Assembly: GCF_000150275.1 (NCBI RefSeq)
Contig: NW_002060962.1
Span: 799,205-863,204, forward strand
Length of the DNA stretch: 64,000 bases
Origin: Trichoplax adhaerens
Taxonomy: Eukaryota; Animalia; Placozoa
Reading direction: 5' to 3'
The notes under the pieces were generated by a model that saw only the letters and a list, made by a program, of their open reading frames with translations, was not told the DNA's origin and ran no database searches. The position numbers were made by a program, and so were the translations under genes. Positions 37,601 through 61,349 of this stretch are shown in pieces; the first letter of the stretch is position 1; each line of letters starts with the position of its first letter.

Positions 37601-38115
37601 CCGAACCCCCTGAGATCATAGAATTAGTAAACGCAGAGGTGTTCGATGAAACTTGTAAAAATAAACAATTATGTGTAATTTCCTTCTTGCCAAATATCTT
37701 GGACACTGGTGCTAGTGGACGAAATAAATTTCTTGAGCTGATACATGGACTTGGTGATAAATTTAAAAGAAAGCAATGGGGTTGGTTATGGTGCGCTGCT
37801 GGTACACAATCCAAGTTGGAGAGCGCTGTTGGTGTTGGTGGATATGGCTATCCAGCAATGATTGCGCTTAATCCTCGGAAAAGTCTGTTTGCGGAATTGA
37901 AGCTAGCATTTAGTGAGCAGACTGTTAATGAATTTTTAAAAGAATTATCATATGGCCGTGGATCAACTGCAGCCCTTCGTGGCGAAGGACTACCCGAAAT
38001 TTTGACAATTGATAGTTGGGATGGCAAAGACGGCCAATTGCCAGAAGAAGAAGAATTTGATTTAAGCGAACTAGGCATAACTGTAAATGCTGATGATAGT
38101 AAAGATGAATTGTAG
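34629..38115 (+). CDS. PDIA6: Protein disulfide-isomerase A6 (P5), 8 exons, ~452 aa
   Basis: Exons 34629-34641, 35520-35670, 36373-36430, 36589-36675, 36749-36788, 36899-37041, 37131-37352, 37471-38115 (1359 nt). Signal peptide, two [13 protein letters not shown] thioredoxin sites, Gly/Ser linker, P5 C-terminal domain ([14 protein letters not shown]) and KDEL. The 13-nt first exon is less certain. Confidence 0.97.
34882..34931. other. Assembly gap in PDIA6 intron 1
   Basis: Run of N. Confidence 0.95.
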
Positions 38116-43096: not shown

Positions 43097-43770
43097 ATGG
43101 CCGGCAAATTTGTATCTACACTCGTTCCACTTTTGGCTCTAGTCTGCGTCGCAGCAGCTTTAAGAACCGCTAATGATGATTTTGTTATTGGTCAAGATGA
43201 TTCTAATGTTGTCTTAAATTGTGCTGATTCAAAATCAATTGCTGTTAAATACTGGAATATGTGCGGTCTCAAAATCCAACTGTCATCTTGTCCTCTTCCA
43301 TCTATTACCAAGAGATTTGCTACCGCTGAAGATGATGAGAAATTTTACAACGCTTTGGAAGCTAAAAAGAATCGTGATATCAAATTTGATGGTAATTTAC
43401 TTAGATTATAATTTGTTGACATTGTATTCGATAAATAGCATAGCCATTGTCAATATTACGGGCTCGTAAAAGTTATATTCGATACTTAATGATAGCAGTC
43501 TAATAAGAACTCCTTTTTCACGTTCATTAAGGTATTTTGGAGTCCATCAAGGCGTCGAATACTTTCTTAATGCACAACAAACGCGCTCATAATGCTAAGC
43601 TTCGTAATATCAGGCGTCTCTGTTGTAAGAACACTATTATCCCCAACTGCAATGACCGTAAATTCTTGGAAACATGCCCCGGTGGTTCTAGATTCAAACA
43701 AAATTCATATGATGAAATTATCTTCATCGGTTGCGGTTTGGCAGCTGACGAATTAGCCCAAGAAGGTTAA
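43097..43770 (+). CDS. Insulin-like prepropeptide 1 (8 Cys), 2 coding exons, 177 aa
   Basis: Exons 43097-43391 and 43532-43770 (phase-1 intron). Signal peptide; B-like C-x13-C-x8-C; KR; C-peptide; KR; A-like CC-x7-C-x8-C-x18-C. Confidence 0.85.
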
Positions 43771-43879
43771 ATAGAATGCACGCCATAACTTTGCAGCATG
43801 CGAGCAGGACTATTCAATTTACCCTATTAACTTATTATATTCTTGATGATTGGCTCTCCAAAAAACGTGTAGATTATAA

Positions 43880-43896
43880 GATGTGAAGGCAATAAA
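43880..43896 (+). promoter_or_regulatory. Conserved 3'UTR element with polyA signal, GATGTGAAGGCAATAAA (gene 1)
   Basis: Identical 17-mer also at 52978 and 61447. Confidence 0.75.
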
Positions 43897-46800
43897 AAAA
43901 TGTACAACAAAAACTGTGATACGAGTATCTTTCTTATTGTTCAAGTATTGAATCTTCCTCACTGCTCATATAAAGACTTTCTAATGTGAAGATTAAGCAA
44001 CTTTCATTTTTTCTAGTAAAAAACAATCTGGGTAGATCTATTTTATCTGTTAATTTACGATTAGCTACTGTAATAAGATTGCCATAGACCTTTAGTAGCG
44101 AGTAGACAGTAAAACGAAAATTCATATACAATTTAACGTCCGATGGGTAGATACGGCAAAAAATTTATTCTATAAACGAGATTCCTCTGTAATAATACTT
44201 GAAACTGCCATTAAATGTATAAAGGTCGATATTATAAAATTTTTTGATGGATAACAGAAATCTATAAAATTTAGGATAGATTACAGACACAGTACTTATA
44301 CATATACCGCTTGCTAATTTTCTTACTCCAGTATCTGTGTATCAAAATTATTACAGTCAATGTTACTTTCATATCCAAACATCCAGAAACTAGTTGGATT
44401 GAAAAAAATGACCGCAATGCTCACTAGTTAATCTTTCCATCAGGTATGTATTTAATTTAGTTACATCGTGCTCAGGCAGATACTTAACTGCTACTTTATT
44501 AATTAAACGAGATATTCAAAAGACTGTGTCATAATAGCATGCAATCAGAGTAAGAAAGAATTGTCATAAGATATATATAGATCGAACTCAGATCTCGTAA
44601 CTTCGCAAGATTACAGCCTTAAGGTGATATTGTGAAAATGAATAAAATTACGATCAGTTGAAAAGACAAGAAAATACTTTATTTAAAATCATGTTGATTA
44701 CAGCTATACGGTATAGGTAAATTGCTGTAGAACTGTAAATTTTTGTATCTTCCATTCCATTTTGAGTTCAATTCAGCCGGAAATGGACTACTAAAAATAC
44801 AGAAGTAGCTGTATAGATCCAATTGCAGTAGTATACTATACATTTTTTTTAACTTTAATTTTATTTTGAGTTTATTTCAGCAAGAAATAGAGTATTGAAA
44901 TATAGAAATATATTGTTTCATTGCGTAATAGTCATCTTGAAAGCAAATCAGCATAAAATCATTTCACTATTTCTTATTATATAGCGCAAAATATGATCGA
45001 ATGATCTTAGCAGAATGCATTCATCTTAAATTAATATAACAGCCGGTGCTGGTGCTTTTGCTCGATTTTTTTTTGGCTATGACAACTACATCATGAAAGA
45101 AAAATGCCTAATTATATACTATTACGCTGCTTTTCTTCCGTATTGGCTAATATTTGATGAAAAATATTAGTAAAAGAGCAAATGTAGTATTGAGAAATAT
45201 TAAGAACTGAGTGGGTATCGAATAGATGCTCTATCGTCGTAAACAATATAATTATGATCTTAAGTCTAACCGTATTCAAGATTAAATATCCATATTTTAC
45301 ATTTAATTGGATACCTAGTGGCAAAAGTCATACCCAGAGTCTATAAATGAAGGCAGGAAATGGCTCATTAATGTATTGATTGCTGTGATATATTTTGCAG
45401 CTTTAAACTAAACGTTTGATTTTAATTAATAATATTCTACGTACTATCTTTCAGTTATAATTAGGAGTATATTCAGTAACTGCATATATGTGAATATGAG
45501 TAATATAATAAATACTAAGTATTAAGTACTAAATAATTGAACCCGCGTTTTAATAGTAATATTTTTAGTGGCTAAATGAGGATTGAAGATTATTGTTGTA
45601 AGCATCTTATTTATTAATTAATAGGATAGGCATTTACATCCTTTTCCTGATGGCTTAATTATTACTGTACCATTAACGCTTGCTATAGCAATCTAGCTAA
45701 TCAAACGCCTACTCTTTTCTGTTATAAGCTATTGCTAGGAAAATTTAGGCCACGTGTGGAAGTCTCTGAATGCCTAAAGATAACAATTTTTAGATAGGAT
45801 AACATCCATTACCATTTCAGAAATTTTACTGCTATGACTTCTGTACGCTTTGATTGTTAAGGAATGCATTAACATCGTTAACTTTACCTCAGTCCTATAT
45901 TTTAGTGTTCATTCGATGTAATACAAATATCTCGATAGTTTCAAAACTAATTTATTACCTACATAATGAGTAATGAAATTTCATCAACATTGGGCTTTTA
46001 ATGGTGCGAGAAAAATATTACTTGACATTTGAAATTTTCGATTCATAAATTAGGAAGTAAGAAATTATCCTATTTCTAAGTCAGAATTATTAATGCCTAA
46101 AGCTGACTATCTTACCTGCTATGGTAATAAAGTCTCCAATTAGCTGCAGACTTCGGTTACGTATAATGACAGTAGCAATTTTAAATTTCGATTTAATGGA
46201 TGGTATATATTACCGAAGCAAACATTTTAAACTATCTAGAAATAGTTTTGTTAGGCATTGCAGTAAATATAATTACATAGTATAAATAATTTACGAAACA
46301 ATTAGTAAATAAATTATAATGATTCATGATTAAAGTAATGCTTCATGATTATTTATTACCAATTTTATCAGTTTAATAATAAAGTCAGAAATGGTTCCCA
46401 ATTTAAACACATATTAGAATAGAGACTATAATACGTATTGAGTAATATACTTAATTATGTTTCATTAAAGCTTAGAACTGTGGTTTATATTTTTGGACGT
46501 AGAATGTAGATCTGATATTATATCATTATCATTATTTTGATTTGATGTCAGTTACTATCGTGATCTTTCCAAATATCACTTTGTCATAACTATCCAGATA
46601 ATATAAAGTTACAGGAATATATTCGTATCTTTTCTATTGTTGACACCTCTAAAACTACCCCTCTGTAGTTGCCTTGCTAACTACTAATCGTTACTAGAGT
46701 CTCAAAAATAATTGCTCAAAACAACTATTAAGGTTTTACTTACAAATAGATTATTTTTAGGAAGGACTCGCTCTCACAGTAACAAAATGGAACTCATTTA

Positions 46801-49396
46801 ACTTTATTTTACTCATCATTTTTTGGATTATCCCTCTACAGCATACGAACTTAAAGATAAGATTATAAAAAGTAACCTAATAGGAGGCACCGGTATCTAA
46901 ATATAGGACGACAATTCTCAAAAAATTTTTTATACATGATATCAATTTAGCACAATCAAAGTCTATTCTTGACCTAAATTGAGAAGAATTGATCAAAAAT
47001 CAAAATAAAGCTTTATGCATAAGCTTATCTTCCATTCTTCTTGAACAGACAGACATTCTATCTCAAAATTAATAAACTACTGCCATTTAATATTACTGAC
47101 GGAATACCTACAAATGCCTATTTAATAAAATAATAGACGTGAATAAACAACAGTAGCATATATGATTTGCTAGTGACGGAAAATGTAGTTTCGTTACAAG
47201 ACTATATAAAACTTTCTGTCACAGCCATAAGAAGTATTTATACTTTTAATAAAGACTTTATTACGTGAATTAAGATAGAAATTAACTGCGATATATAGAA
47301 ATCATTAGTGCAAGCATTAAGCTTATTTACTGATAGTTACACCTTATTGTAGATAGCATCGTATTATCAATACACACTGTATAAATATTATGAATAGATC
47401 CGAAAATATATAATGCTCAAATATTTATTGTCGATTGCAGATGCTTTATAAGTGATCGAGACAGTTTTAGAAATTTAATGTCGTAGAAGCTATTAATGAC
47501 GTGAAATGTCATTTAACGTGCATTCAAAGTTCCTATATAATGCCATTTTAAGAATAAAATCTAGGTCAATTTAGTAGGCGTGGGTTAAAATGTGATTAAT
47601 AGTTTACGCTAAGAAAATAAGATTAAATTTGCTGCTTTAATTTTAAATTATAGCATTATCATAAATCATTAGTAACTGAAGGGAAAAAAGTTATCAATTA
47701 ATAGCAAATCTGAAATTACTCCGTAGTCTACTTTTAACAGCGACAGCTGCAAATCCATCTTAGAAGATTAAAAGTTGCTGAATTAAACTTTCATGAACTA
47801 TAATGGGCAGCGATATACTCTTTAGATATGATGATAAAATGAAGTATGATATGACTGAACTTTCATTACTAGTAAACACACAAATATAAAGCCTTTTAAA
47901 TTAAGCCATTAACATACTGAATACATCAGTCTCGTATATTATAATTTTGCAACCATCACTATAGTACGGTTTATATGGATAGCAGAATCAAAGTAGCTAG
48001 GCAAAGACACAAATTACTGGTTATAATTGGACACTTCAATATTTGCTATATATGAGAATAGCCAAATGAATTTTATGAGATAAAGCACTTGATCAGATAA
48101 TCCATCAATCAATGTATCAATTAATCTTGTTTAAAATGATTTTATCTATTATTTATTATTTTGGAAATTGGCTATTAAATTCGTGAGCAATATTACTTGC
48201 TGCATATTTTATTATTAATTAATCCGCGTAGCCATGATGCATCCTAGATATTACAAAAAAATAATAAAAAACAAGACGATATCATTACGAAGGGATTGCT
48301 CGAATTTAAGCTAAACCTTATCAAATTCATATAGATTGAATAAATTGCAATTTAATAGAGACGCCATTTAGTCATCTACCTAGTATGGGGTACAGAATAA
48401 ACCATGATGCTAATTTAAAAATATCAAAATCATTACAGTCCTCCAGGATCTCTTGTGTACTTTATAATGATAATTTCGTTTTCAATCAATATCATTTCTA
48501 CTCTTGCTTCGATTAGGTTAATAAAGAAAAAGTATTCAATATAATACATTCAACATTCTATGTCTTATCTATGTGAAGGAATTGATAATAAAACATTCGA
48601 TTGCTGTTGTAAATCATGAAATTCGTATCAGCCAACAAATTGTAGAGTTGCAACGTTCGGATTTATATTTTAAATACTGTACTTAAACTGCTCTGCTAGA
48701 TACGACAATAGAGTCTGGTATTAAAGTATGAATAGTTTAAACTAGCTAGCTGCAAGTTTAAAAATCAGTCGACCGCGAATTAATGTTATTTTTCTATCTC
48801 AAAATAAACAAACTATTAAAAACATTATTAAATATTCATTTATTTAAGGCAAATAAATGAAGTCGACCTACTTCTATCAATTCAATTACATTATGTCCTT
48901 GTAACAGTATAAGATGGTCTTAAGAAGGTGATACTAAACAATCTGTTGATTAATTCAAGTTTATTGGGATTTATATATTACACCGATTGAGCTGAGTGTT
49001 GGTAATTTTACATGGAGACACTATAGCTTGATTTGAATGTTTGTAGCTTCCTTCCGTAAGTCCTCATCATAGAGTGAATTTTAGAGGAATAAATGATTAT
49101 CTGATGAATATAGAGGATATTCGAATAGGTTGCATGAATATGAATCGATATCTGTAATTTTCAAGTTTAGCTAACGAGATGGTGTATCAAATAATCAACA
49201 GTTACTATCCATGATAATGCTACTAAGACCAAAAACGAGGTCAATGAATTAAATTTTTTGATTGTTTATCCAGTTCGAATATTGCATAAAATTTTGATGT
49301 ACAACTCTTGATTGACTTTTACTTAGAACCTTCTAATAGCTATAGGAAATGCATAAATTATACAATAGTTCCATTAATATTCTACAGAATGAGATT

Positions 49397-49593
49397 TGCA
49401 CCTGTTATTTTATGATATTTATTTGTTAATTGAGCTCGGTATATTTCTTGTTAACAATAGAGTTATTAATGTTATATGGCTTGCGGAAAACCTTTAAAAG
49501 CTTAAGGATTGACGGCTTAAATTATTGTCTTTGCTTTTCTGGAGGATTGCAGCTTCAGCCAGAAGAATTATTCCACCCATCTTTTACCTACAG
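49397..49593 (+). promoter_or_regulatory. Predicted promoter and non-coding first exon of insulin-like gene 2
   Basis: TGCACCTGTTA at 49397, TTTAAAAG at 49493, donor cag|gtaccg at 49594, acceptor tag at 50884-50886; block conserved with 59670-59873. Confidence 0.6.
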
Positions 49594-50896
49594 GTACCGA
49601 TAATCTTCAATTTTAGCATAGTTTCTACTAATACTTATGCTATCTAGCTTGGTTTATTTGGAAGATGGTTGTAAATTGTAACTTGCTACATGTGATTTAC
49701 AAATACGATGACAATTTATAGTAAAATAGTGTTAAACGAGATACTTTGTAGCTTATTTATCTGCCAGTTACTAAACTGGTATTTTAATGTATTACAATTT
49801 TATTACTTTCGCATAGTCCTATTTCTGCTTTGATTGCCATGATTACAAAATAAGATAATAGTTAGTAGTAGGATGTTGCTAAAACAGAATAACTTACATC
49901 GTAGCGTATTTATCTGTCAGTTACTTAATCAATTTAAGAAGGTATTCTATTATTATAACTTTAATGGAATGCTACTTCCAGCTTGACTACTACAATTACT
50001 ATAATCAGTAAAATAAGATAATAATTTTAGTATATTGTCAATTATTTAACCGGTATTCTGATTAATTATAATTTTATAACATTAATGTAGTACTACAGTT
50101 TGGCTACTAATATTAGTAAAATATTAGGAGGATATGTAGCAAGATGTTGGTAAAATGAGGCACAATATAAGATAGTCTAGTCATCGGCTAAATAATCAAT
50201 CAATATTCTCAAGCATCTTAATTTTATGATTTTAATGTAGCACTACTTTTGATTCGATTACTATAATTAGCAAATATATCGTGACAATTTGCAGCAGAAT
50301 GTCGATAAAATGAAGTCATTCTTGTACATATATGCGCCTGCCAAGTAATCGATCGCTATTTTCTTGCATTATTCATCCTTTTATAATTTGAATACTACTT
50401 CAAAATGTTCTAAAATACTGTATTAGCTCGAAGCTTATATTCAAATTGTTCGTAAAATAGGTGAATTTTGTGCGATAGCTAGTCCATTTAGGCTGTTTTT
50501 AATATAGCTAAGGAAATCCTTTATAGAAAATTCACAGATATTTTCTAAAATATGTACTAATTAAGTTGTGCTAATAACCACTACTTCATTTCTTTTCAAT
50601 CAACTATTAACTGCCGATATTAAGTAATTTGCTCTTATTGCTACCAAAGCCTTAATATCTACGCAAAATATTCATTCCTCATGTTATTAATACACAACGA
50701 CCATAGTTAGTGGTTCTCAATTTAATAAGTCAATTTGAAAATCATACTTGAAAAAGAATTAACAGTTCTATTGCTATAGTCCATTAATATTGTTTTATAA
50801 ATCAGTTACCAATCATTTGTTTACAATTATAAACTCGCTGCTTAAAAATTTACACATTGCTATTTCATCTACTCTAGTTACTATAGGCATATAAGA

Positions 50897-52879
50897 ATGG
50901 CCAAATTGAATGTTTTATCGTTGATTGCCTTTTTGGCTGGCTTAGTCGTTGTCATTGAAGGAACGGATTTTATCATCTTTAATGAAATCCCGCCTACTAT
51001 TCACGTATGCGGCGATCAGAGGCTACAGATTTTAGATTATTGGGCAGAATGTGAATTGAACGTCCCCTTTGATGACTGTCCACTCAAGCGTCGCCGATCA
51101 GTTGATGTAAATCTCATTTCTGATTTCAACAAAGAGCCATCTTATAGCAAATTTGATGACCGTAAGTATAAGTCATAATTACTGCTAAATTCTTACTAGT
51201 TGTTATTATTCCAGACGAGGTAAACTTGGATATGGTTTCCATGAGTAGTTGCCTTGATAATGAATTTCCAATTCAATTTCAAGATGGTTTAATAAAACTT
51301 ATTAATTAACTGTATTTTTCTGTTTGTTTAATTATGCATTTGCTACTATCTGTATTAGAGAAAAAAATTAGCAGTGTTTGGCCATTCCATTTTATGGATA
51401 GCAAATTTTGTCTCATTTCTTTATAACATGTTATTAATCGTTCATTAGAAATATCTCTTACAAATTGATATTAGTTTAATTTAAAATATGAGTACGGCAT
51501 AGTCTTTCATTTAATTTCCAGTATACACGGTACGGTATAAAGTTACAGAACCTCTGTTAAATAGCTAAAAATGGAGAGTTACTGTAAGATTAGAGAAATG
51601 CGGTATGTATATCAGTATATGTCATATACTCAGGCTTTATCAACCAATGTACAAATGCTGTAGTCGTTACTACTACACAGTACACGGTATAAAGTTACTG
51701 AACCTCTGACAGGTCTACGACAAATGGTAATACTATCTGTTAAATGAGCACATTATCGTAAACCGTCAGCAAAGCGACGGGAGTTTGCACTAGTAATAAT
51801 ACGAAGTAAAGCACATAGGACGTATAACAGTCAGTTATACTAAAAGACTAAATATAGATGATAGTAAATAAGTTCTTTATTGGAGTCATATACTGACATG
51901 ATTCTTAATTCCTGGGTAGAATATTGTAAAGGAATATTTAATCATTTTATGTATAAGTTTTATGGAATGATTAATCTAGAGTTTACAGTAAGTTAGTATA
52001 ATTATCCAGTTTATCTTGATCGTTTCCAACTGTTCCTATGAGGAGAAAAGGAGTGTAATATTCTCCGATTGACAGACTTGAAAAATGTTACTTTTAAGGT
52101 TAAAAAGCGGTCTTGATAATCAAATTAGGGAATTATTCTGTTTAACAACTTAAATCTTGAGTTAGAGGATCGAAAACCTTACTGGTTAAAAATTCATCCA
52201 TCAAGATTACTTACGCAATGCTTGATTAGATTAATTTGTTATATCATAGAGGCAGCAATGTAGCCTTTAAAAGTTACCAAGGCCTTTACGTGATTTGAAA
52301 TGACATCTTCACTCGACGTGTTCATTAAATACTTTCGGTATATTGCAGTTGTAAATTCAATTTAGCACCCTTACATTTTTAAATCCATTTCTTTTATATA
52401 TGTATGTATTTATTTATACGTATTGTCATAAGAAATATGTATCCATATATAGTAAAGCATACAGTACATTCTAAGAAGTAATTTATCAATCTTAAGCAGA
52501 GTTTGCTTGATAATTCCGATTCCTGATGGATATTATTTAACATATAGCTAACATTTACAATTTTATAGTTAATTTATGTAGGTGCAGTCGTATAATTAAT
52601 ATTTTTGATTTATCGCTGATATGTATCATTTACTATACAGGATTGATTGAAGCTGACAACGTTAATAATTTCTTAAAATTTGGAAAAACTTTATATGCGC
52701 GTCTTCAACCTTTGAATCTTGAAAAAATAGACGAGAAATGCTGTATGCCAGCACCCAATCCAGCGACTGAATGTGGTATGTTGCCTGATTTATGTCCTGG
52801 CGGTAGCATGTTTGATGAAACTACCAGAGAACAAGTTATTATAGGTGGTTGCGAAGTTTTTATTGAAGAAAATCTATAA
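50897..52879 (+). CDS. Insulin-like prepropeptide 2 (8 Cys), 2 coding exons, 167 aa
   Basis: Exons 50897-51161 and 52641-52879 (phase-1 intron). Signal peptide; HVCG..C-x13-C-x8-C; KRRR; CC-x9-C-x6-C-x18-C. Confidence 0.85.
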
Positions 52880-52977
52880 TTTTTCTCGCTATCAATCGTT
52901 GATTTAAGTAAGCAGAACTATCCAATTTACTCCCTCAAAGTATGATTGCTTACTGCGATCAAATATGTAGACTGCAA

Positions 52978-52994
52978 GATGTGAAGGCAATAAA
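52978..52994 (+). promoter_or_regulatory. Conserved 3'UTR element with polyA signal (gene 2)
   Basis: GATGTGAAGGCAATAAA. Confidence 0.75.
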
Positions 52995-55900
52995 GATGAT
53001 GTTATAAAATCGATTCTTGAATTTCGCTTTATTTATTTTTGTTCCGTTGATTTAAATTTTGGATCATGAGGCTATTTATTTTAATAATAGAGCCTTGAAA
53101 TAGACATGTTCCATTTCTATTCAGACTTAATCTAAATTAGACTAGTGTAACTAACAGATTATGCAAGTTAAATTGAAAGCTATTGCTGTAGTTTGTACAA
53201 CAATAAAGTTTAGCTTGCTAAACTTTATTGTACAAAAGTAGATTCGACTGCCAATATAGAGAAAAAATTTCTTGACAGTTGGGCAATCTCAGCTTTCGTG
53301 CTTGATGACTGCTAGAATTTCTCGCGGACACAGTAGGTAATTTTTAAGTTCTATATCTATTAGTATATTGTAAATTAAATTACCATAGGAAGAATAATAC
53401 CAATAAGAAGAAATAGGTCAAATTTGTGATACTGTCAATAAAACTATATTGCGATAATATTCTAATATACCTATCTTATTTACTGTATATGTACGTGTAT
53501 CTAAGTACAGTATATGAATTATGATCGTCAACTACCCAGTATAAAAATACTGTTGTGCATTATTTTGCTAGCTGGGATCATAAATTGTGAGGTTGATAGA
53601 TAAAAAATCTTCAAAACTTTAGAAAATATAAGATTTATTGAACAAAACCTCGTTTACGAAGATACAACGTAACCGATTAGCTGAGGACCTCTAACGAGAA
53701 AGAACTTTCTTACTATACTAGACTACTCGCTTAATACTTTTCCGCGTTTACAGTCTTAGCACCTTACTTACTACACACTTCAGTATTAGCATCTCAAATA
53801 CAGACTAGTTTACATCTTTCATGTGAAGCTCTAGTGTGAGCACTGTAGCACTCCTCTTCAAAAGGATTACAGTTACTAAGCTAGCTATATTTAATGCTTA
53901 AGCCTCGAACGAGAATATCTATCACATGTTGAACACAACGCCTACGGTAGACATTACTAAATATATCATCAACTTAGAATACAATATTACACTGTCTTAT
54001 ATAAATAAACCCGTATGATAGTTAATAGCCTCTGTTATTGTAGCATACTTTCCCAAAATCTTTTTAATAGTAGTTATTGTATTATATTTATTGGTATATG
54101 TTCATCTCAGTGACGAATAGGAATCTCACGTCATTTCACATTATCTAACATCGCCAATAGGCCGTAAATTTATCTCCTGCAGCTTATACCATAACTAATA
54201 GATAATTACCATCAAAATTGCCGTTACTTTTCTCTTATAACATGTCATACATAGTATAAGACCAGCTGATTTATTAGTTTCCTCTACTAATAAATTGGTA
54301 ATGTTACACTGATTATGTATATTCCCTCTATATTCCAGTAAAATGGGTAATTTTGTCTGTAGGTGGGGGCTACTTTTACTCTCACGTTGTTTTATATCAT
54401 TATCATATTATTTCTTAGTATTTCAGAGCACAAGTATAAATATATAGAAGTAAAAATTTTAGTAATAACTCTCGGAATAGCATATTTTCAACATTGTGGG
54501 TTTGAAGTCTAGCTATAGTAAGAATAATGAAATTCATTTCTGAATATCTCTATTCTGTCATTTGCAAGGTGACTCAATCATAGGTGTATGCTATTAAAAA
54601 TTGAACTTCTGAAATTTTGAATCGGCCTAATCAATGGTATTTGTTCTTTGCTATCGGTCGATAAACATAGTAAAATCTTAGTGCATGTTAGTAATTTGCA
54701 TTCAATTACTATTAATGAAATAGACATTTCGGAATCGTGCGTTTTTAAAGTTATGGAATTTAAAAGCCTAAATTTACTAATCATTTAGGGATAAATTGTG
54801 GGATTATATTCAACTGATACAAACTTAAAATAAATCTATTTTCCGCATAGAAAGTAGTTGCTTGTATAACTTTAATATGATTGATTATAAGAAGGGTACG
54901 GTAGTAACTATGAACTTATTTAATCGTATTTTGATAATAAAAACTATAGTCTTTGCCTTAAAAGTATCATAACGAGTCTTATGCCTGATAATGGTAAGCT
55001 CAAGCTGAAGCGTTATATTTGTGAACTACGTTGGATAAATTTTTACTAACTTTAGCTATAGGTAAGAGCGTAAACAGATTAGTTTCAGAGGACATATATC
55101 ACTTTATTAATACGCGAAAAGATTTGAACTTTTAAAAGAATGACTTTATAATATTGTAGTATAGCTTCCTTATGCTAGTATGAGGAGAATTACTCGCCTT
55201 ACATCAAGCTAAGTAATATTAAGCAACATCTAAGAATTTAAACTGACCTTAATCGGTGCTTTAATCTTGATGTTCGAGGTGAAATGCTCATTAAAATTAG
55301 AGCCTATTTAAGAAAGTTAAATCGAAATTTTAATATTCTAAATCCGTAATCACGCTTTGATTCTGCCTTTATATAGACAAAAGTGTTAAAATCTGCAACG
55401 ATAAAGACTAATTGGTTTAATTGATGCGACACATTAGGCGTGCGCTATATTTAAATTTTCGGCTAATTATATTTTCAGACGGATTAAATTGTAAATAAGC
55501 TCTCCGCGAACAAAAGTAGTAGAATAAATAGAGATGAGAGCAATAAAAATGCTAGCAAGTCATATTCTTTTAACAGATAACATCATATAAATAGTGAACT
55601 GATATAGCTGAAATTAGCATAGAATCAAACTAGAAGGAATCCAGTTTAGTTTCTAACTCAAGAATGATTACTATTAGACATGATACGTTGAAACAGCTAA
55701 CCGTTATGCAGCATAAAACTCATCGACGTAAAATAAGCAATCGAAAATTTCGAAATGCGGGCTAATATTTTCTAGTTAATGCCACGCAATAATTAATTAG
55801 TAGCGTTATTAATTAATTATCACTTTCTAGATATAATGCTGTCGTTAAATTTATAAAGATAACCGGTAACCAGTATTGCTCTTAATGATAAGTAATATTG

Positions 55901-56304
55901 TTTCTATTTCGTAATATAAAGCGTTCATGTCCTATTATATAAGAATGCCAATTTTTAAATCATTACCTGCGTAAGAGTGTTGAGATACAAAATGAAAATT
56001 ATTATGATTTAACTGCGGACAAATTAATAATACCGGTACTCTTCAACAATAGCTAAATTTTCTTATGGCAAAGCAATAGATTAAATTTTAGCATGAATCT
56101 TCGCTTTGCAATAAATTTGCAGATAATTCAACAGCTAAGAAAACAAGGACATTCAGAAGGAAAACTTACTATTTTAATAATGGTTTCTATATTATGATAG
56201 TAATAAATTATTAGCAACATGCTCTACATAAATACGGATATCTAGGAAATGGAATTGCTTCGGATATTAGGTAATATAATTATATTCATTTGAAAGCATT
56301 CAAG

Positions 56305-56660
56305 CATGGTATTATTTCAGCTCCTTTTGGAATATTTTATCTTTATGACACTCTTACAGATGATCTTCATCAGAATTCTAAACATTGCTATAATAGCCTT
56401 ATCAATATAATTACTTCTCTCGCTCTGATTTAATGAGTTTAAAAATTCAGTAGAGATCCGCCTATTCTGACAAAAATCTCTATTATCTACATGGCTTAAT
56501 TATTAAATATATCATTTTAAGCATTATTACAGAGATTATTGACTAATATCAAGTGCTGTAAGTTCATCAATTAATTATCGCCTAGCTATTTGCTGCTAGA
56601 GTTCAATTATGTAGTAGATTATTTTGGTTAGAAAGTGGCTACAAACTAGATTTACAATAA
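56305..56660 (+). repeat. Dispersed repeat, copy 2 (homologous to 15355-15700)
   Basis: Same colinear blocks as copy 1. Confidence 0.65.
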
Positions 56661-59600
56661 AGCTGGTATGATTTGAGTAATGAATATATGCCACAGTACT
56701 GAGCGCTACTTTTAGCAATCCGAATTATTAGCCTTAAGGATGTGGCGTTAATGTTAGTCTTGGGAACTGAAATATCTCTATGTTTGTGCTTTATTTTTCT
56801 ATCAGAGGTAATTGTATATGGTAATCATTAAGCATCTTACAGCACAATAAAATAAATCATTCAACTGTTTTAAACTTTAATTCGTCGCTCAGACAATATG
56901 TGACAAAATTCTGCTAACATCAATATCCTGCACCTACGACGGCGACACTAATCATAACATTTCATGTTACGCAGATAGTTCATAATTATCATCAATTCTG
57001 CAAGCTAAAGAATAGTCTGATTGGATATCTGAAATCAAATTATAACAAAATTATAATACGTAGGTACCACCTTTCAACTGAAGTATCTTCATAAATGATT
57101 TATAACGTTGGAGTACATGGACCAATACTTTAAAATGCAAAACGTATCAGTAAAGTTTAATCACTACTATAAGTGTAAATTTCTATCATGAAATTTGTAC
57201 ACTATATTAGTCAAATTGGATATTCTTTCATGATTATAAGAATTTTTGTATAGCTTTAACAAATATTTACTACACGAATTCAAGTGAAAATTAATGACTA
57301 TGTCTGGATGCTATAGAGAACTTATGACTATACGTCAGAACAGAGGGTAGGAAGTTGATCTAAGAATTACATCATTTATTTATGGCCTATTGTTTATTTC
57401 TATTTCATTTACACTTTGGCCATTCGATACTGCTACCTGCATTAAGTGCAATAGAAGACGTCAACGTAAAATATAATATTAATATGCCGTCAAAAATTTT
57501 TACTACATGATACATTATTAACAATGGAATACCAGTACAAGTTAAATTTATTTGAAATGTGTTAATAGGCGTAGTAAAAAATTAACACTAAGAATAGTGT
57601 GTTTTAATTTTCAGCTTATTAATTTTCACAGTGTTATAGTGCTAACAAAACGACAGGAAACATACTATATAGGATATAGAGCTATTAAATAATAATTGAT
57701 TTGGTCTTACTCCTTAGTTGAATTCTGATTCTGGCAGCTGTAATTCTGTGATTGGAAATGAAGATTTGATGAATTAAATTTTGATGAATTATAGAGATTA
57801 TCGCGATGAACTTACTACACGTTTTAAGATAAAGAAATACTTTATAAAAGGTTTTTCGTGGACAGTAGATATGAAGTTGACTGTTTCTCTATTTTACTGT
57901 GTCCAGTATATCAATCTAAATTACATTATTGCTAAGAATTTGCTGTATTACGATAGTTCATAGGATTAAAAGGTCAATATGAGTACATGCAAATAAAAAT
58001 TACTGAATATAATAATAAACTAATGCGCTAATACGATATTTTATATCTACTAGAATAAAGTTTGATATTTATTCATCAATAGTTAGATAAGCCAATTTAT
58101 CAATCAATATATCAATTAATCTTGTTTAAAAATGATTTCATTCATTATTTATTCTGCTTGAAGTGACTTATTGGATTCCCAATGGAAGGCACTTAGTGCT
58201 TAGTTGGTGTATAATTATCTAGATAGAAATAAAGGTGCATCCTAGGTGTTTCAAACAAATAGTAATATCATTGCTACGATATTATTCGATTTCTTGGCTA
58301 GACAATATTTATCAGATTCATTTAGACTGGATTGCTTAGACATAAACAGGGATAGTGCTATTATCTATAAAGCATTAATTATTGAAAAAATCCGTCAAAT
58401 TAACTTAAAACTAAACAGCGTTACTAATACGCTAAGGCGTCCCACTTCCTATTGTTACATTTTCCTTCATAAGCCAATGCAATATCTATTTTTGACTACG
58501 TAGCAATTGAAATGTTACTATCAACATTAAAAATTTATCTTATTAATCAAACGAACTGATTATTTTTATATTAAAAATAGGTTTATTATTTTTTAAAGTG
58601 CACAGCATATCGATTAACCATTGCATATAACTGATAAACTCTTTTGGTACTTAATTATTAAGCTTTGCTACCTAGCGCATTACTTCAATGTTTAAGATTA
58701 TTAGTCATCCTTTATTGCAAAAATTAAATGTATCACTAGCCACTCTTCTTAATCGAGATTACGTAACTGTATTAAACATTTCGTTTCTCTGTTTAGCATC
58801 TTTATAAAAGTCTATTTCGATACATTTGCATTGCCAAAATATTATATTATTCAGTTGGTATTTGTCATCTACGCTAATTTTGTACATCATCTTATAAAAT
58901 TTGAACTCTTGTAATACATAGATTGTAGCAGTTGAATGGCTTAACTAGATAGATGATGCAATATTATATACTTCGGTATGGCGTTAAGGCAAAAGGTGTT
59001 CAAGTCTACCCAAGCGAAAACTTTAATGGTGATCACTCACTCAAGTGTGGAGTGATATGTGTCATTTTATATGTCATCGTAATCAAAACATTATTGAATA
59101 TTTATAAATTTACGGCAGCTATAGGAAATTGATCAAATTCTATCGATCATATTACTCCAATTGAATATAAACATAACGCCTTAGGGCGAAAAGAATTTTA
59201 AAACAAATTATTGATTTGTTAAAGTCCGTACGAGATTGATACTTTTATCACGTTAGATATTCGAAGCGATTTTATGTAGAGTTTATATATCTTGGTTGAT
59301 ACAATAGAGCTTCTTCTAGAAAGTTCTCTGCATCTTAAAATGAGGTATAAAAAATAGGATAACTATCTAAGGAATGTAATAGGAATCTAAATAACACGAC
59401 ACAGTTATCAACACCGTTAGTTATCCAAGTGGACTGACGATATCGAATTAAATGATTTACAATTCGAATGATGATGAGACCAAGGCACTAAAATATTAGT
59501 TTCGAAATAAATTTCTTGATTGTTTATTTCTGAATACGTAATATTTTAATATTCATTTCCCTATTGGCCTTTAGTTGGAACAGTCCTAATAATTATAATC

Positions 59601-59669
59601 ATTATAATCAGAAGGAAATCCATAAATTACAAAACAAATCGATTAATATTCGACAGGACAGGAAGATTT

Positions 59670-59873
59670 TGCACCTGTTATTTATGATATTGGCGAATAT
59701 GCTAATTGCGATTGATCCACTTCTGTTATTAATAGAGGCCATTAATTTTGCATGCCGATAGCTTAAGGGCAACCTTTAAAAGCTAGCGGATTAACGGTTT
59801 TACGTTATTGTGTTTGCTTGTCTGGAAGATTGCAGTTTCAGTCAAAAGAATATTCCATCCGCTCTCACCTAAG
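59670..59873 (+). promoter_or_regulatory. Predicted promoter and non-coding first exon of insulin-like gene 3
   Basis: TGCACCTGTTA at 59670, TTTAAAAG at 59775, donor aag|gtaatc at 59874, acceptor tag at 60385-60387. Confidence 0.6.
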
Positions 59874-60397
59874 GTAATCTTTAGTTTTAGCGCACTTTCC
59901 ATTTGCATTTGTACTATGGAGTCCTTGTCTGTGCTATAATAGACAAAATAGAATGATAATCTGCAGAATGCTATCAATTGAATAGGGCTATAGGTGTATG
60001 TATTTTGATTTTTAAATTTTACTCCTACTTTGCATAGCCTTAAATATACTAGTATAATATTCAATAATCTATATTCAAATAGTTAATAAAGCATATTAAT
60101 ACAACAGCAACTTTACTCAGTGCAATATTAGTTTAATCAAATCTTGATAATGTAGAAAATTTACTCGTAATCTTCATATTATCATTGAGTTAACTTACAG
60201 CTACTAGAGTACTTAATCTCTAAGCAAAGTAAAATCGAATACCAAATAGTGTTTTATGTTATTAAGATATCATGTAATAGTTTTACTTGAAAAAAGAAGG
60301 ACTATCATAGCAAAGTCTATTCAATGGTAGAATAAATTGGCTTGCCAATATTTTGTATTTAAATTTTATATGTAAAAATTATTTTAGGTAGATAATA

Positions 60398-61349
60398 ATG
60401 GCCAAATTGAATGTTGTATCTTTGGTTGCCTTTTTGGCTGGCTTAGTCGTTGTCATTGAAGGAGGAGATTTCATCATCTTCAATGAAATTCCTCCTACTG
60501 TTCACGTTTGCGGTAATCAGAGGCAGCAGGTTTTAGATTACTGGGCAGAATGTGAATTAAACATTCCCTTCGATGAATGTCCACTTAAACGACGTCGATC
60601 AGTTGATGTAGACATTGTTACTGATTTCAAGAAAGAGCCATCTTATACCAAATTTGACGACCGTAAGTATAAGTTGCAACTGAAAGATACTACGGCCTCA
60701 ATGATAATTGGGCTGTATACTTTATATTTATTTAACATCTATCTAATAATATCGCCAAAACTATAATTCCTAGATAATGTGTATATCAACTAGGCATTTC
60801 TACCTCAGATGATGCATATGTTGATAGTGTCTTTCATTGTTAGAAAATTATTGATCTATCAATTTAGTAACAGAGATTGGTAAATGGACATTAATTCAAT
60901 TTTATTTCAAATTAATATACAAATATAATTGTTCTATTAGCCTACTTTAGAACATCTACCCAAAAAAGTATTTAATAATGTAGAAATTGAATAGCCAAAT
61001 CATTTTAATTCTTACTAGTTGATATGCAACATCTTGCCAGTAACTTATATACAATTCTTGATTTTTCAAGGGGATAGCGGATAATAACTTCTTTCTTTAT
61101 TATGTAGGATTGATTGAAGCTGGTCACCACACTAATAACTTCTTGAAATTTGGAAAATCTTTATACACCCGTCTTCAAGAATTGAACCTTGAAAAATTAG
61201 ACGAGAAATGCTGTATGCCTCCACCCATGCCTGCCAAGGAATGCGAAATGTTGCCTCAGCTATGTCCTGGTGGCAGTATGTTCAATGAAGCCCTTAAAGA
61301 TGATATCATTAAAGGTGGTTGCGAAATTTTTATCGAAGAAAATCTATAA
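60398..61349 (+). CDS. Insulin-like prepropeptide 3 (8 Cys), 2 coding exons, 168 aa; close paralog of gene 2
   Basis: Exons 60398-60662 and 61108-61349 (phase-1 intron); ~78% identical to gene 2 by manual count, with the same Cys frame. Confidence 0.85.

What the first reader, a model, noticed from the sequence alone, without database searches (positions are those of the whole stretch)
43097..61349. Tandem cluster of three atypical 4-disulfide insulin-like hormone precursors
Seen: six short ORFs splice (GT-AG, phase 1) into three same-strand secreted precursors with a signal peptide, a 3-Cys B-like segment, a basic cleavage site, a Cys-free linker, and an A-like segment with CC plus three more Cys. 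Shared residues include YW..C, CPL, KFD, N.FL, CPGGS.F and I.GC. Established: insulin-family precursors are signal-B-C-A with B = C-x11-C and A = CC-x3-C-x8-C, and typically carry a phase-1 intron in the C-peptide. Here the spacing is stretched (x13; x7 or x9), and an extra Cys on each chain suggests a fourth disulfide pinning an extended C-terminal tail to the B chain. Inference: a divergent insulin-superfamily signalling locus in an early-branching animal that standard insulin motif searches may miss. Insulin-like precursors have been predicted in Trichoplax before, so the genes may not be new, but the organisation and shared regulation may be undescribed.
Basis: partly seen in the sequence, partly recalled or inferred. 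Interest (0 to 1): 0.88.

Follow-up and report, generated by a model that had tools for sequence, protein, structure and literature searches.

The report
Placozoan 8-cysteine two-chain prohormone gene cluster
Three neighbouring two-exon genes of Trichoplax sp. H2 encode secreted precursors laid out like insulin, and published mass spectrometry shows one of them is cut after its N-terminal cysteine block, but no sequence-profile or fold search links them to insulin, and the genes are already in public gene and peptide tables.

Summary
The window is Trichoplax sp. H2. The six ORFs join through phase-1 GT-AG introns into three annotated proteins: TrispH2_010967, the TRIADDRAFT_64323 protein, and TrispH2_010965. 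RNA-run contigs show the gene 2 junction.

The three genes are part of a family of six. Five lie in a 43-kb same-strand array that runs past the window end; one is on another contig. All six keep C-x13-C-x8-C, then a basic site, a Cys-free linker holding the intron, then CC-x7-9-C-x6-8-C-x16-18-C.

Najle et al. 2023 (Table S5) already list the genes as markers of the 'peptidergic beta' cell type. They label genes 2 and 3 'hypothetical_prorelaxin' and report peptides released from the linkers.

Insulin membership is not supported. Pfam and PDB profile searches found nothing at E<=10. A profile search of 1.84 billion representative proteins found only family members plus one repetitive, probably spurious hit. 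Two AlphaFold2 models matched no solved fold (best Z 3.5).

Best reading: a family found so far only in placozoans that yields a disulfide-linked two-chain hormone. Its layout resembles insulin; I put true homology at about 0.3. An unchecked scan note (s1-771359) reports similar 8-Cys precursors elsewhere in this genome.

The parts
43097..43391 (+). g1 (TrispH2_010967) exon 1 CDS. Holds the signal peptide, the 3-Cys block (C42, C56, C65), a KR site at aa 72-73, and the first half of the linker. It ends on base 1 of codon 99.
   Evidence: Linker residues 74-92 were found as a free peptide with an N-terminally trimmed ladder in PMC10580291 Table S5.
43392..43531 (+). g1 intron: 140 bp, GT..AG, phase 1.
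   Evidence: An in-frame TAA at 43528-43530 lies directly before the acceptor. The detected peptide at residues 100-114 therefore has to be reached by splicing.
43532..43770 (+). g1 exon 2 CDS. Holds the rest of the linker (KR at aa 115-116, RR at 126-127) and the 5-Cys block (C129, C130, C138, C147, C166), then the stop codon.
   Evidence: Residues 100-114 were detected by MS, followed in the protein by KR.
50897..51161 (+). g2 (protein identical to TRIADDRAFT_64323; listed as TrispH2_010966 by gene order) exon 1 CDS. Holds the signal peptide, the 3-Cys block (C38, C52, C61), KRRR at aa 64-67, and part of the linker.
   Evidence: An RNA-run contig covers 50933-51162 at depth 661-1326, against 7-30 in the intron.
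51162..52640 (+). g2 intron: 1479 bp, GT..AG, phase 1. It carries a dispersed repeat at about 51560-51800.
   Evidence: The joint 51161->52641 is seen in runs X4, X7 and X1. The repeat has at least 473 first-look candidate matches in the genome.
52641..52879 (+). g2 exon 2 CDS. Holds the rest of the linker, with no dibasic site, and the 5-Cys block (C122, C123, C133, C140, C159), then the stop codon.
   Evidence: RNA-run contigs start at 52641 and extend to about 53010-53325, which covers the 3'UTR.
60398..60662 (+). g3 (TrispH2_010965) exon 1 CDS. Holds the signal peptide, the 3-Cys block, KRRR, and part of the linker.
   Evidence: A 12-residue linker peptide starting 4 residues after KRRR was detected by MS.
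60663..61107 (+). g3 intron: 445 bp, GT..AG, phase 1.
   Evidence: The join agrees with public protein P0001.
61108..61349 (+). g3 exon 2 CDS. Holds the rest of the linker and the 5-Cys block (C123, C124, C134, C141, C160), then the stop codon.

Best explanation
The three genes are members 1-3 of a six-gene family of peptide-hormone precursors, found so far only in placozoan sequences.

Proposed mechanism:
- The precursor enters the secretory pathway through its N-terminal signal peptide.
- The N-terminal 3-Cys block (one helix between Cys1 and Cys2) and the C-terminal 5-Cys block (a helix ending at the CC pair, a Pro-rich loop, a short helix, and a long C-terminal helix) fold onto each other and are locked by four disulfides. 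This step is inferred.
- A prohormone convertase cuts at the basic site directly after the first block. This is shown for g1.
- In g1, g5 and g6, a further cut is made at a second dibasic site 2-14 residues before the CC pair. A cut at the KR 12 residues before the CC pair is shown for g1.

The products would be a disulfide-linked two-chain molecule plus free linker peptides. In g2-g4, which lack the second site, the linker would stay attached to the second chain.

The genes are made in one endocrine-like cell type, 'peptidergic beta'. The layout works like insulin/relaxin, but the family cannot be filed in the insulin superfamily on present evidence.
For: Gene structure, splicing and species.

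Family of exactly six genes, each hit on both exons, five of them in one same-strand array.

Invariant 3+5 Cys framework, a basic site after block 1 in all six, and a phase-1 intron in the linker in all six.

Purifying selection on every segment (omega 0.07-0.33), strongest on block 1.

AF2 models:
- Both Cys blocks are modelled with confidence: pLDDT 71-90 for g2, 70-85 for g1.
- Both models share the same four core helices.
- In g2 the linker is low-confidence (pLDDT 33-47). In g1 only its centre is (40-47); its first half is a helix at pLDDT 74-80.
-.

Published data (PMC10580291 Table S5):
- Top expression is in peptidergic_beta for all three genes.
- A signal peptide is flagged for g1 and g3.
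- The free g1 peptide at residues 74-92 is bounded by KR and by R.
- The free g1 peptide at residues 100-114 is followed by KR.

Restricted distribution: 6 hits in 1.84 billion proteins, of which 5 are family members and 1 is a repetitive, probably spurious protein. Copies at 66-73% identity occur on contigs of other public assemblies.
Against: - No Cys-containing chain has been observed by mass spectrometry, so the two-chain product and its disulfide map are inferred.
- g2-g4 lack a second dibasic site.
- The linker is itself conserved (KFD and N.FL motifs; omega 0.13-0.33), which a discarded spacer would not need.
- The AF2 models rest on only 13 rows and have mean pLDDT 62-64.
- No receptor is known.
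Confidence: 0.7

Rival explanations
1. The proteins are true, very divergent members of the insulin/relaxin superfamily. They would have the three-helix insulin core and the canonical A6-A11, A7-B7 and A20-B19 disulfides, plus a fourth bond tying Cys3 of the B-like block to the last Cys of a C-terminal A-chain extension.
For: - The order is signal, B, basic site, linker, A.
- A phase-1 intron lies in the linker in all six genes. Insulin-family genes carry one in the C-peptide (my own knowledge).
- The helix positions mirror insulin (my own knowledge): a helix between the first two Cys, and a helix ending at the CC pair.
- g2, g3 and g6 have C-G at the first Cys.
- Diamond-based labelling in PMC10580291 called g2 and g3 'hypothetical_prorelaxin'.
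Against: - No Pfam hit at E<=10 on exons or on full-length proteins.
- No PDB chain at E<=10 with the family profile.
- No insulin-like protein among the hits of a profile search of 1.84 billion proteins.
- No insulin, IGF or relaxin structure among the fold matches.
- Spacings are x13 instead of x11, and CC-x6-9-C instead of CC-x3-C.
- The Gly after Cys1 is not conserved across the family.
- The genome is annotated with a separate insulin-named set, TrispH2_004495-004497.
Confidence: 0.3
2. The signals are the linear linker peptides. The two Cys blocks would serve only as a folded carrier or sorting domain, as neurophysin does for vasopressin.
For: - Apart from one low-confidence hexapeptide from the g3 C-terminal block, only linker peptides have been detected by MS, several with high scores and many spectra.
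- The linker is under purifying selection.
- The linker keeps the KFD and N.FL motifs between paralogs that are only 28% identical.
Against: - The Cys blocks are at least as constrained as the linker (omega 0.07-0.16 for block 1).
- The detected peptides carry no amidation or pyroglutamate.
- They show ragged N-termini, typical of by-products.
- Peptidomics without reduction would miss disulfide-linked chains in any case.
Confidence: 0.2
3. The products are secreted proteins that do not signal, for example antimicrobial or digestive accessory proteins.
For: RNA contig depth is high. The fold is Cys-rich, small and unclassified.
Against: Expression peaks in a peptidergic cell type, not in lipophil, gland or epithelial cells, and the processing is of the convertase type.
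Confidence: 0.05

Closest known systems
Insulin/relaxin superfamily (Pfam PF00049), including the four-disulfide variants I recall from nematode, mollusc and crustacean insulin-like peptides (my own knowledge, not tested here)
   Same: - Precursor order: signal peptide, Cys-bearing N-terminal chain, basic cleavage site, Cys-free spacer with a phase-1 intron, C-terminal chain starting its Cys set with CC.
- A helix between the first two Cys and a helix ending at CC.
- Tandem gene arrays.
- Endocrine-type cell expression.
   Different: - No detectable sequence-profile or fold similarity.
- C-x13-C instead of C-x11-C.
- CC-x6-9-C-x6-8-C instead of CC-x3-C-x8-C.
- A further 27-30 residues with a long helix and a fifth Cys after the A-like core.
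- A third Cys on the first chain.
- The spacer is conserved, and in three of six genes it cannot be excised at a dibasic site.
Trichoplax insulin-like peptides TrIns1-4 (Nikitin 2015, as reported in PMC12702675 and bioRxiv 10.1101/360925). PMC10580291 Table S5 lists an insulin-named set TrispH2_004495-004497; I assume but did not check that this is the same set.
   Same: Same animal. Both are secreted Cys-rich precursors expressed in peptidergic cells and arranged in tandem.
   Different: - TrIns1-4 are reported with a CC-x4-C-x8-C signature; the present family has x6-9.
- The insulin-named genes have different gene numbers and different cell types (gamma-like, mu, iota-like rather than beta).
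- I could not retrieve their sequences for a direct comparison.
Orthogroups OG_4552 ('hypothetical_prorelaxin') and OG_4553 (unnamed) in Najle et al. 2023, Table S5
   Same: These are the same genes: TrispH2_010965 and 010966 (g3, g2) and TrispH2_010967 (g1). That table is the source for their cell type, expression and peptides.
   Different: - The table splits the family into two orthogroups.
- It does not list TrispH2_010963 or 010964, the numbers g4 and g5 would carry by gene order.
- It gives only an automatic similarity label.
- I found no description of the 8-Cys framework, the five-gene array or the two-chain model in the paper's text.

Membership tests
Insulin/relaxin superfamily (PF00049) | Significant match to the family profile | tested here: not met
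   hmmscan against Pfam-A at E<=10 gave no match to PF00049 for the six exon products (the only row, for g1 exon 2, was DUF5769 at E 0.044, below its cut-off) or for P0001, P0002 and P0005. The six-frame genome search with PF00049 gave no match anywhere and is uninformative.
Insulin/relaxin superfamily (PF00049) | A-chain signature CC-x3-C-x8-C | tested here: not met
   CC-x7-C-x8-C (g1), CC-x9-C-x6-C (g2-g4), CC-x8-C-x8-C (g5, g6), and x6 in a g1 orthologue. Only the x8 of g1, g5 and g6 agrees.
Insulin/relaxin superfamily (PF00049) | B-chain C-x11-C, with Gly after the first Cys | tested here: not met
   C-x13-C in all six genes. Gly follows Cys1 only in g2, g3 and g6.
Insulin/relaxin superfamily (PF00049) | Three-helix insulin fold | tested here: inconclusive
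   The AF2 models have a B-like helix, a helix ending at CC, a short helix, and an extra long helix. No insulin, IGF or relaxin entry appears with Foldseek PDB (0 hits) or VIA-align wide (best Z 3.5 and 3.4, unrelated helical proteins). Small two-chain folds are hard targets for these aligners, so this does not exclude the fold.
Insulin/relaxin superfamily (PF00049) | Disulfide connectivity A6-A11, A7-B7, A20-B19 | not testable with these tools
   Model coordinates are not returned. All paralogs keep all eight Cys, so there is no gain or loss pattern to use.
Insulin/relaxin superfamily (PF00049) | Precursor layout signal-B-C-A with convertase sites flanking C | tested here: met
   Met in full for g1, g5 and g6. 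g2-g4 have only the first site. Use of the KR after the first block, and of the KR 12 residues before CC, is shown by MS for g1.
Insulin/relaxin superfamily (PF00049) | Phase-1 intron inside the C-peptide coding region | tested here: met
   Present in all six genes. This is weak evidence, because phase-1 introns are common in secreted proteins.
Insulin/relaxin superfamily (PF00049) | Signals through an insulin-receptor-type kinase or a type-C LGR | not testable with these tools
   No receptor data. No long open frame (75 aa or more) suggesting an LRR-7TM receptor within about 25 kb of g6; short LRR exons would have been missed, so this check is weak.
Convertase-processed peptide-hormone precursors (general class) | Signal peptide, cleavage at basic sites, peptides detectable in tissue, expression in peptidergic cells | tested here: met
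   Sequence features. Published peptides and cell type. RNA junction and exon-restricted contig depth.

The most novel reading that the evidence does not exclude
The six genes encode a previously unrecognised class of four-disulfide, two-chain hormones of Placozoa. The class would be either the most divergent known branch of the insulin/relaxin superfamily or an independent invention of the same precursor logic. It would be released by the 'peptidergic beta' cells and read by one of the animal's many orphan LGRs or by its insulin-receptor-like kinases.
Probability: 0.3. Interest if true: 0.7.

Novelty: new variant of a known kind. Interest (0 to 1): 0.45.

Why it matters
Placozoans have no neurons and coordinate behaviour through secreted peptides. 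Most of their roughly 900 GPCRs, including dozens of relaxin-receptor-like LGRs, have no known ligand.

This family is strongly expressed, restricted to one cell type, and processed by convertases. Its members are folded two-chain ligand candidates rather than short amidated peptides, so they suit those receptors.

If homology to insulin/relaxin were shown, the known sequence range of that superfamily would widen, and its diversification would be dated before the cnidarian-bilaterian ancestor. If homology were excluded, this would be a clean case of convergent precursor design.

Either way, motif and profile searches miss the family, so current counts of 'insulin-like' genes in early animals may be incomplete.

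Tried and rejected
- Pfam on exons and full-length proteins: nothing relevant.
- PDB sequence profile search: nothing.
- ESM Atlas: best score 0.77, unrelated bacterial clusters, no structure held.
- PF00049 six-frame search of the genome: no match anywhere, uninformative.
- Two DNA patterns meant to locate the published TrIns3 gene (an A-chain ending in C-P-I-H-G): 0 hits. I therefore could not fetch the animal's insulin-named genes for a profile-profile comparison.
- Nikitin 2015 is not held in the library.
- Searching papers by gene identifier: 0 papers in main text. The hit came only from supplement text.
- Foldseek against PDB and BFVD, and VIA-align wide on both models: nothing above noise.
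There is no verdict.
- A look for a linked LGR receptor within about 25 kb of g6: no long open frame suggesting one. Short LRR exons would have been missed.
- Rfam on the intron repeat: nothing.
The spliced forms I searched and folded are the public database proteins P0001, P0002, P0005 and P0008. g4, g6 and the H2 copy of g5 were handled exon by exon, and their joined products were not searched or folded.
Full report
**What is in the sequence**

The interval holds six ORFs on the + strand. Read against the DNA, they pair into three two-exon genes with GT..AG introns in phase 1:
- g1: 43097-43391 and 43532-43770
- g2: 50897-51161 and 52641-52879
- g3: 60398-60662 and 61108-61349

A protein search with the exon 1 ORFs returned the public spliced products:
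- P0005, TrispH2_010967, 177 aa: 100% identity to the g1 query.
- P0001, TrispH2_010965, 168 aa: 100% identity to the g3 query.
- P0002, TRIADDRAFT_64323, 167 aa: 83% identity to the g3 query. Its sequence is that of g2.

The window is therefore Trichoplax sp. H2, and the genome search places it at contig C1395:799205-863204. The joined lengths I derive from the DNA equal the database lengths.

Every spliced sequence I searched or folded is one of these public proteins. Genes without one were handled exon by exon, and their joined step was left out.

**Transcript support**

Contigs of two RNA-Seq runs (X4, X7) and of run X1 carry a joint from 51161 to 52641. It skips 1479 bases with GT..AG ends. 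Run X2, whose depth is flat like DNA, lacks it.

Contigs over the g2 exons have word depths of 550-1326. Most intronic contigs have 5-80. These are contigs with a 29-letter overhang at the joint, not raw reads, so the support is moderate. It does repeat across at least two studies.

For g1 the support comes from published peptidomics (see below). A detected peptide starts at the first full codon of exon 2. An in-frame TAA lies three bases before that exon, so the frame can only be entered by splicing.

**The family is larger than the window shows**

Searching the whole assembly with exon products, and then with a family profile, gave exactly twelve hits: six genes, each hit on both exons.
- Five genes lie on the same strand of C1395, starting at 842301, 850101, 859602, 874480 and 883690.
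- g4 and g5 are 11 and 20 kb past the window end.
- g6 is on contig C1411.

All six share the following:
- a phase-1 intron in the Cys-free linker;
- a conserved motif right after the signal peptide (DFIIFN in g2-g4 and g6, with variants in g1 and g5);
- C-x13-C-x8-C in the first block, with a basic site 2-6 residues after Cys3 in g1-g4 and g6 (in g5, after an extra fourth Cys);
- CC-x7-9-C-x6-8-C-x16-18-C in the second block.

The distance from CC to the fourth Cys of that block is constant (15-16 residues between them), while the Cys in between shifts position. g5 has two extra Cys.

A second dibasic site lies 2-14 residues before CC in g1, g5 and g6 only.

**Distribution**

A profile search of 1.84 billion representative proteins gave six hits at E<=0.001:
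- g2 itself;
- the g5 product;
- three single-exon ORF calls;
- one repetitive, probably spurious protein.

The single-exon calls sit on contigs of other public assemblies (Logan and ENA). Those contigs also hold the partner exon where they are long enough, at 66-73% identity. This fits the orthogroup spread over four placozoan species reported by Najle et al. I saw nothing outside placozoan-like sequences.

**Selection**

Nei-Gojobori estimates between paralogs and between putative orthologues give omega 0.07-0.33 in every segment. The first Cys block is lowest (0.07-0.16). The linker (0.13-0.33) is also constrained. Synonymous sites are saturated in several comparisons, so these are rough values.

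**Published data on these genes**

The supplement of Najle et al. 2023 (PMC10580291, Table S5) lists:
- TrispH2_010965 and 010966 as 'hypothetical_prorelaxin' (OG_4552; four species);
- TrispH2_010967 without a name (OG_4553);
- 'peptidergic_beta' as the top cell type for all three.

The label comes from sensitive diamond searches against a neuropeptide collection. The paper's text does not mention relaxin or insulin.

Their mass spectrometry found the following peptides:
- g1, residues 74-92. This starts right after KR and ends before R, and comes with a ladder of N-terminally trimmed forms.
- g1, residues 100-114. This is followed in the protein by KR.
- g3, a 12-residue linker peptide.
- g3, one low-confidence hexapeptide from the C-terminal block.

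Cleavage after the first Cys block, and at the KR 12 residues before CC, is therefore shown for g1. No disulfide-bearing chain has been observed.

The same table lists different genes (TrispH2_004495-004497) under insulin-type names, in other cell types. A review describes the TrIns1-4 signature as CC-x4-C-x8-C (PMC12702675). I take the present family to be distinct from TrIns1-4, although I could not retrieve those sequences.

**Test of insulin membership**

Sequence tests:
- Pfam found nothing relevant at E<=10 on exons or full-length proteins.
- A family profile found no PDB chain at E<=10.
- The ESM Atlas gave nothing useful.

Structure tests: AlphaFold2 on 13-row alignments gave mean pLDDT 62 (g2) and 64 (g1).
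- Both Cys blocks are confident: 71-90 in g2, 70-85 in g1.
- Both models share the same four core helices: one between Cys1 and Cys2, one ending at CC, a short one before the fourth Cys of block 2, and a long C-terminal one holding the last Cys.
- In g2 the linker is low-confidence (33-47). In g1 only its centre is low (40-47); its first half forms a helix at 74-80.
- Foldseek against PDB gave no hit.
- VIA-align against 48,161 chains gave best Z 3.5 and 3.4, to unrelated helical proteins.
- BFVD gave nothing.

Small two-chain folds are poor targets for such searches, so the fold test is inconclusive rather than negative. No positive evidence of an insulin fold emerged, and both diagnostic Cys spacings are not met.

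What remains in favour is the precursor layout, the intron phase, the position of two helices relative to the Cys, and the automatic 'prorelaxin' label.

**Reading**

I commit to a placozoan family of convertase-processed precursors that yield a disulfide-linked two-chain product plus free linker peptides, made in the peptidergic beta cells (confidence 0.7).
- Shown: gene structure, expression, cell type, cleavage after block 1, and the g1 cut at the KR 12 residues before CC.
- Inferred: association of the two blocks, the four disulfides, and the signalling role.

True insulin/relaxin homology is possible; I put it at about 0.3. The alternative that the linker peptides are the signals, with the Cys blocks as a carrier, cannot be excluded (0.2). 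The linker is conserved, and apart from one low-confidence hexapeptide its fragments are the only species seen so far.

**Novelty**

The genes, their expression and their linker peptides are public. In the searched library I found no text describing:
- the family as a whole;
- its invariant 3+5 Cys framework;
- the five-gene array plus a dispersed sixth copy;
- the split into genes with and without a second cleavage site.

I rate it a new variant of a known kind, of moderate interest.

An unchecked scan note (s1-771359) reports 8-Cys insulin-like paralogs on another piece of this genome. That may be g6.

Noticed in passing
G000:C1395:874480-875207 (L017:1276-2003) and G000:C1395:883693-885582 (L018): Two further family members, g4 and g5, continue the same-strand array beyond the window end. 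g5 has 10 Cys instead of 8; its spliced product is public protein P0008.
   Followed up: yes
G000:C1411:3344641-3347487 (L019:4642-7488): A sixth, dispersed family member, g6. It has a 2.4-kb intron, KRRKR after block 1, and KR before the CC pair. No long open frame (75 aa or more) suggesting a receptor gene was seen within about 25 kb.
   Followed up: partly
window 51560-51800 (inside the g2 intron): A dispersed repeat of about 120-240 bp with at least 473 first-look candidate matches in the genome, some 98-100% identical. It gives very deep, many-ended contigs in sequencing runs and accounts for only a small part of the length of the g2 intron. It has no Rfam match.
   Followed up: partly
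window 50897-50965 versus 60398-60466: The signal-peptide codons of g2 and g3 have much lower synonymous divergence (dS 0.13) than the rest of the genes (0.46-0.89). This hints at gene conversion or a constrained 5' region. Only 23 codons are involved.
   Followed up: no
window 37639-38112 (+): An exon matching the PDIA6-like C-terminal thioredoxin domain (PF24541, E 5e-7). A protein disulfide isomerase gene therefore lies about 5 kb upstream of the first gene of a disulfide-rich hormone array. This may be coincidence.
   Followed up: partly
L027:~500-800 (G000:C1411, about 3320500-3320800): A stretch of N (masked or withheld) in the assembly, about 24 kb upstream of g6.
   Followed up: no
PMC10580291 Table S5, row TrispH2_010966: The H2 gene model for g2 is flagged as lacking a signal peptide and shows about 60-fold lower expression than g1 and g3. 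Yet the window encodes a product identical to TRIADDRAFT_64323 with a clear signal peptide, and RNA-run contigs are deep. The H2 model may be mis-built, or reads may be shared with g3.
   Followed up: no
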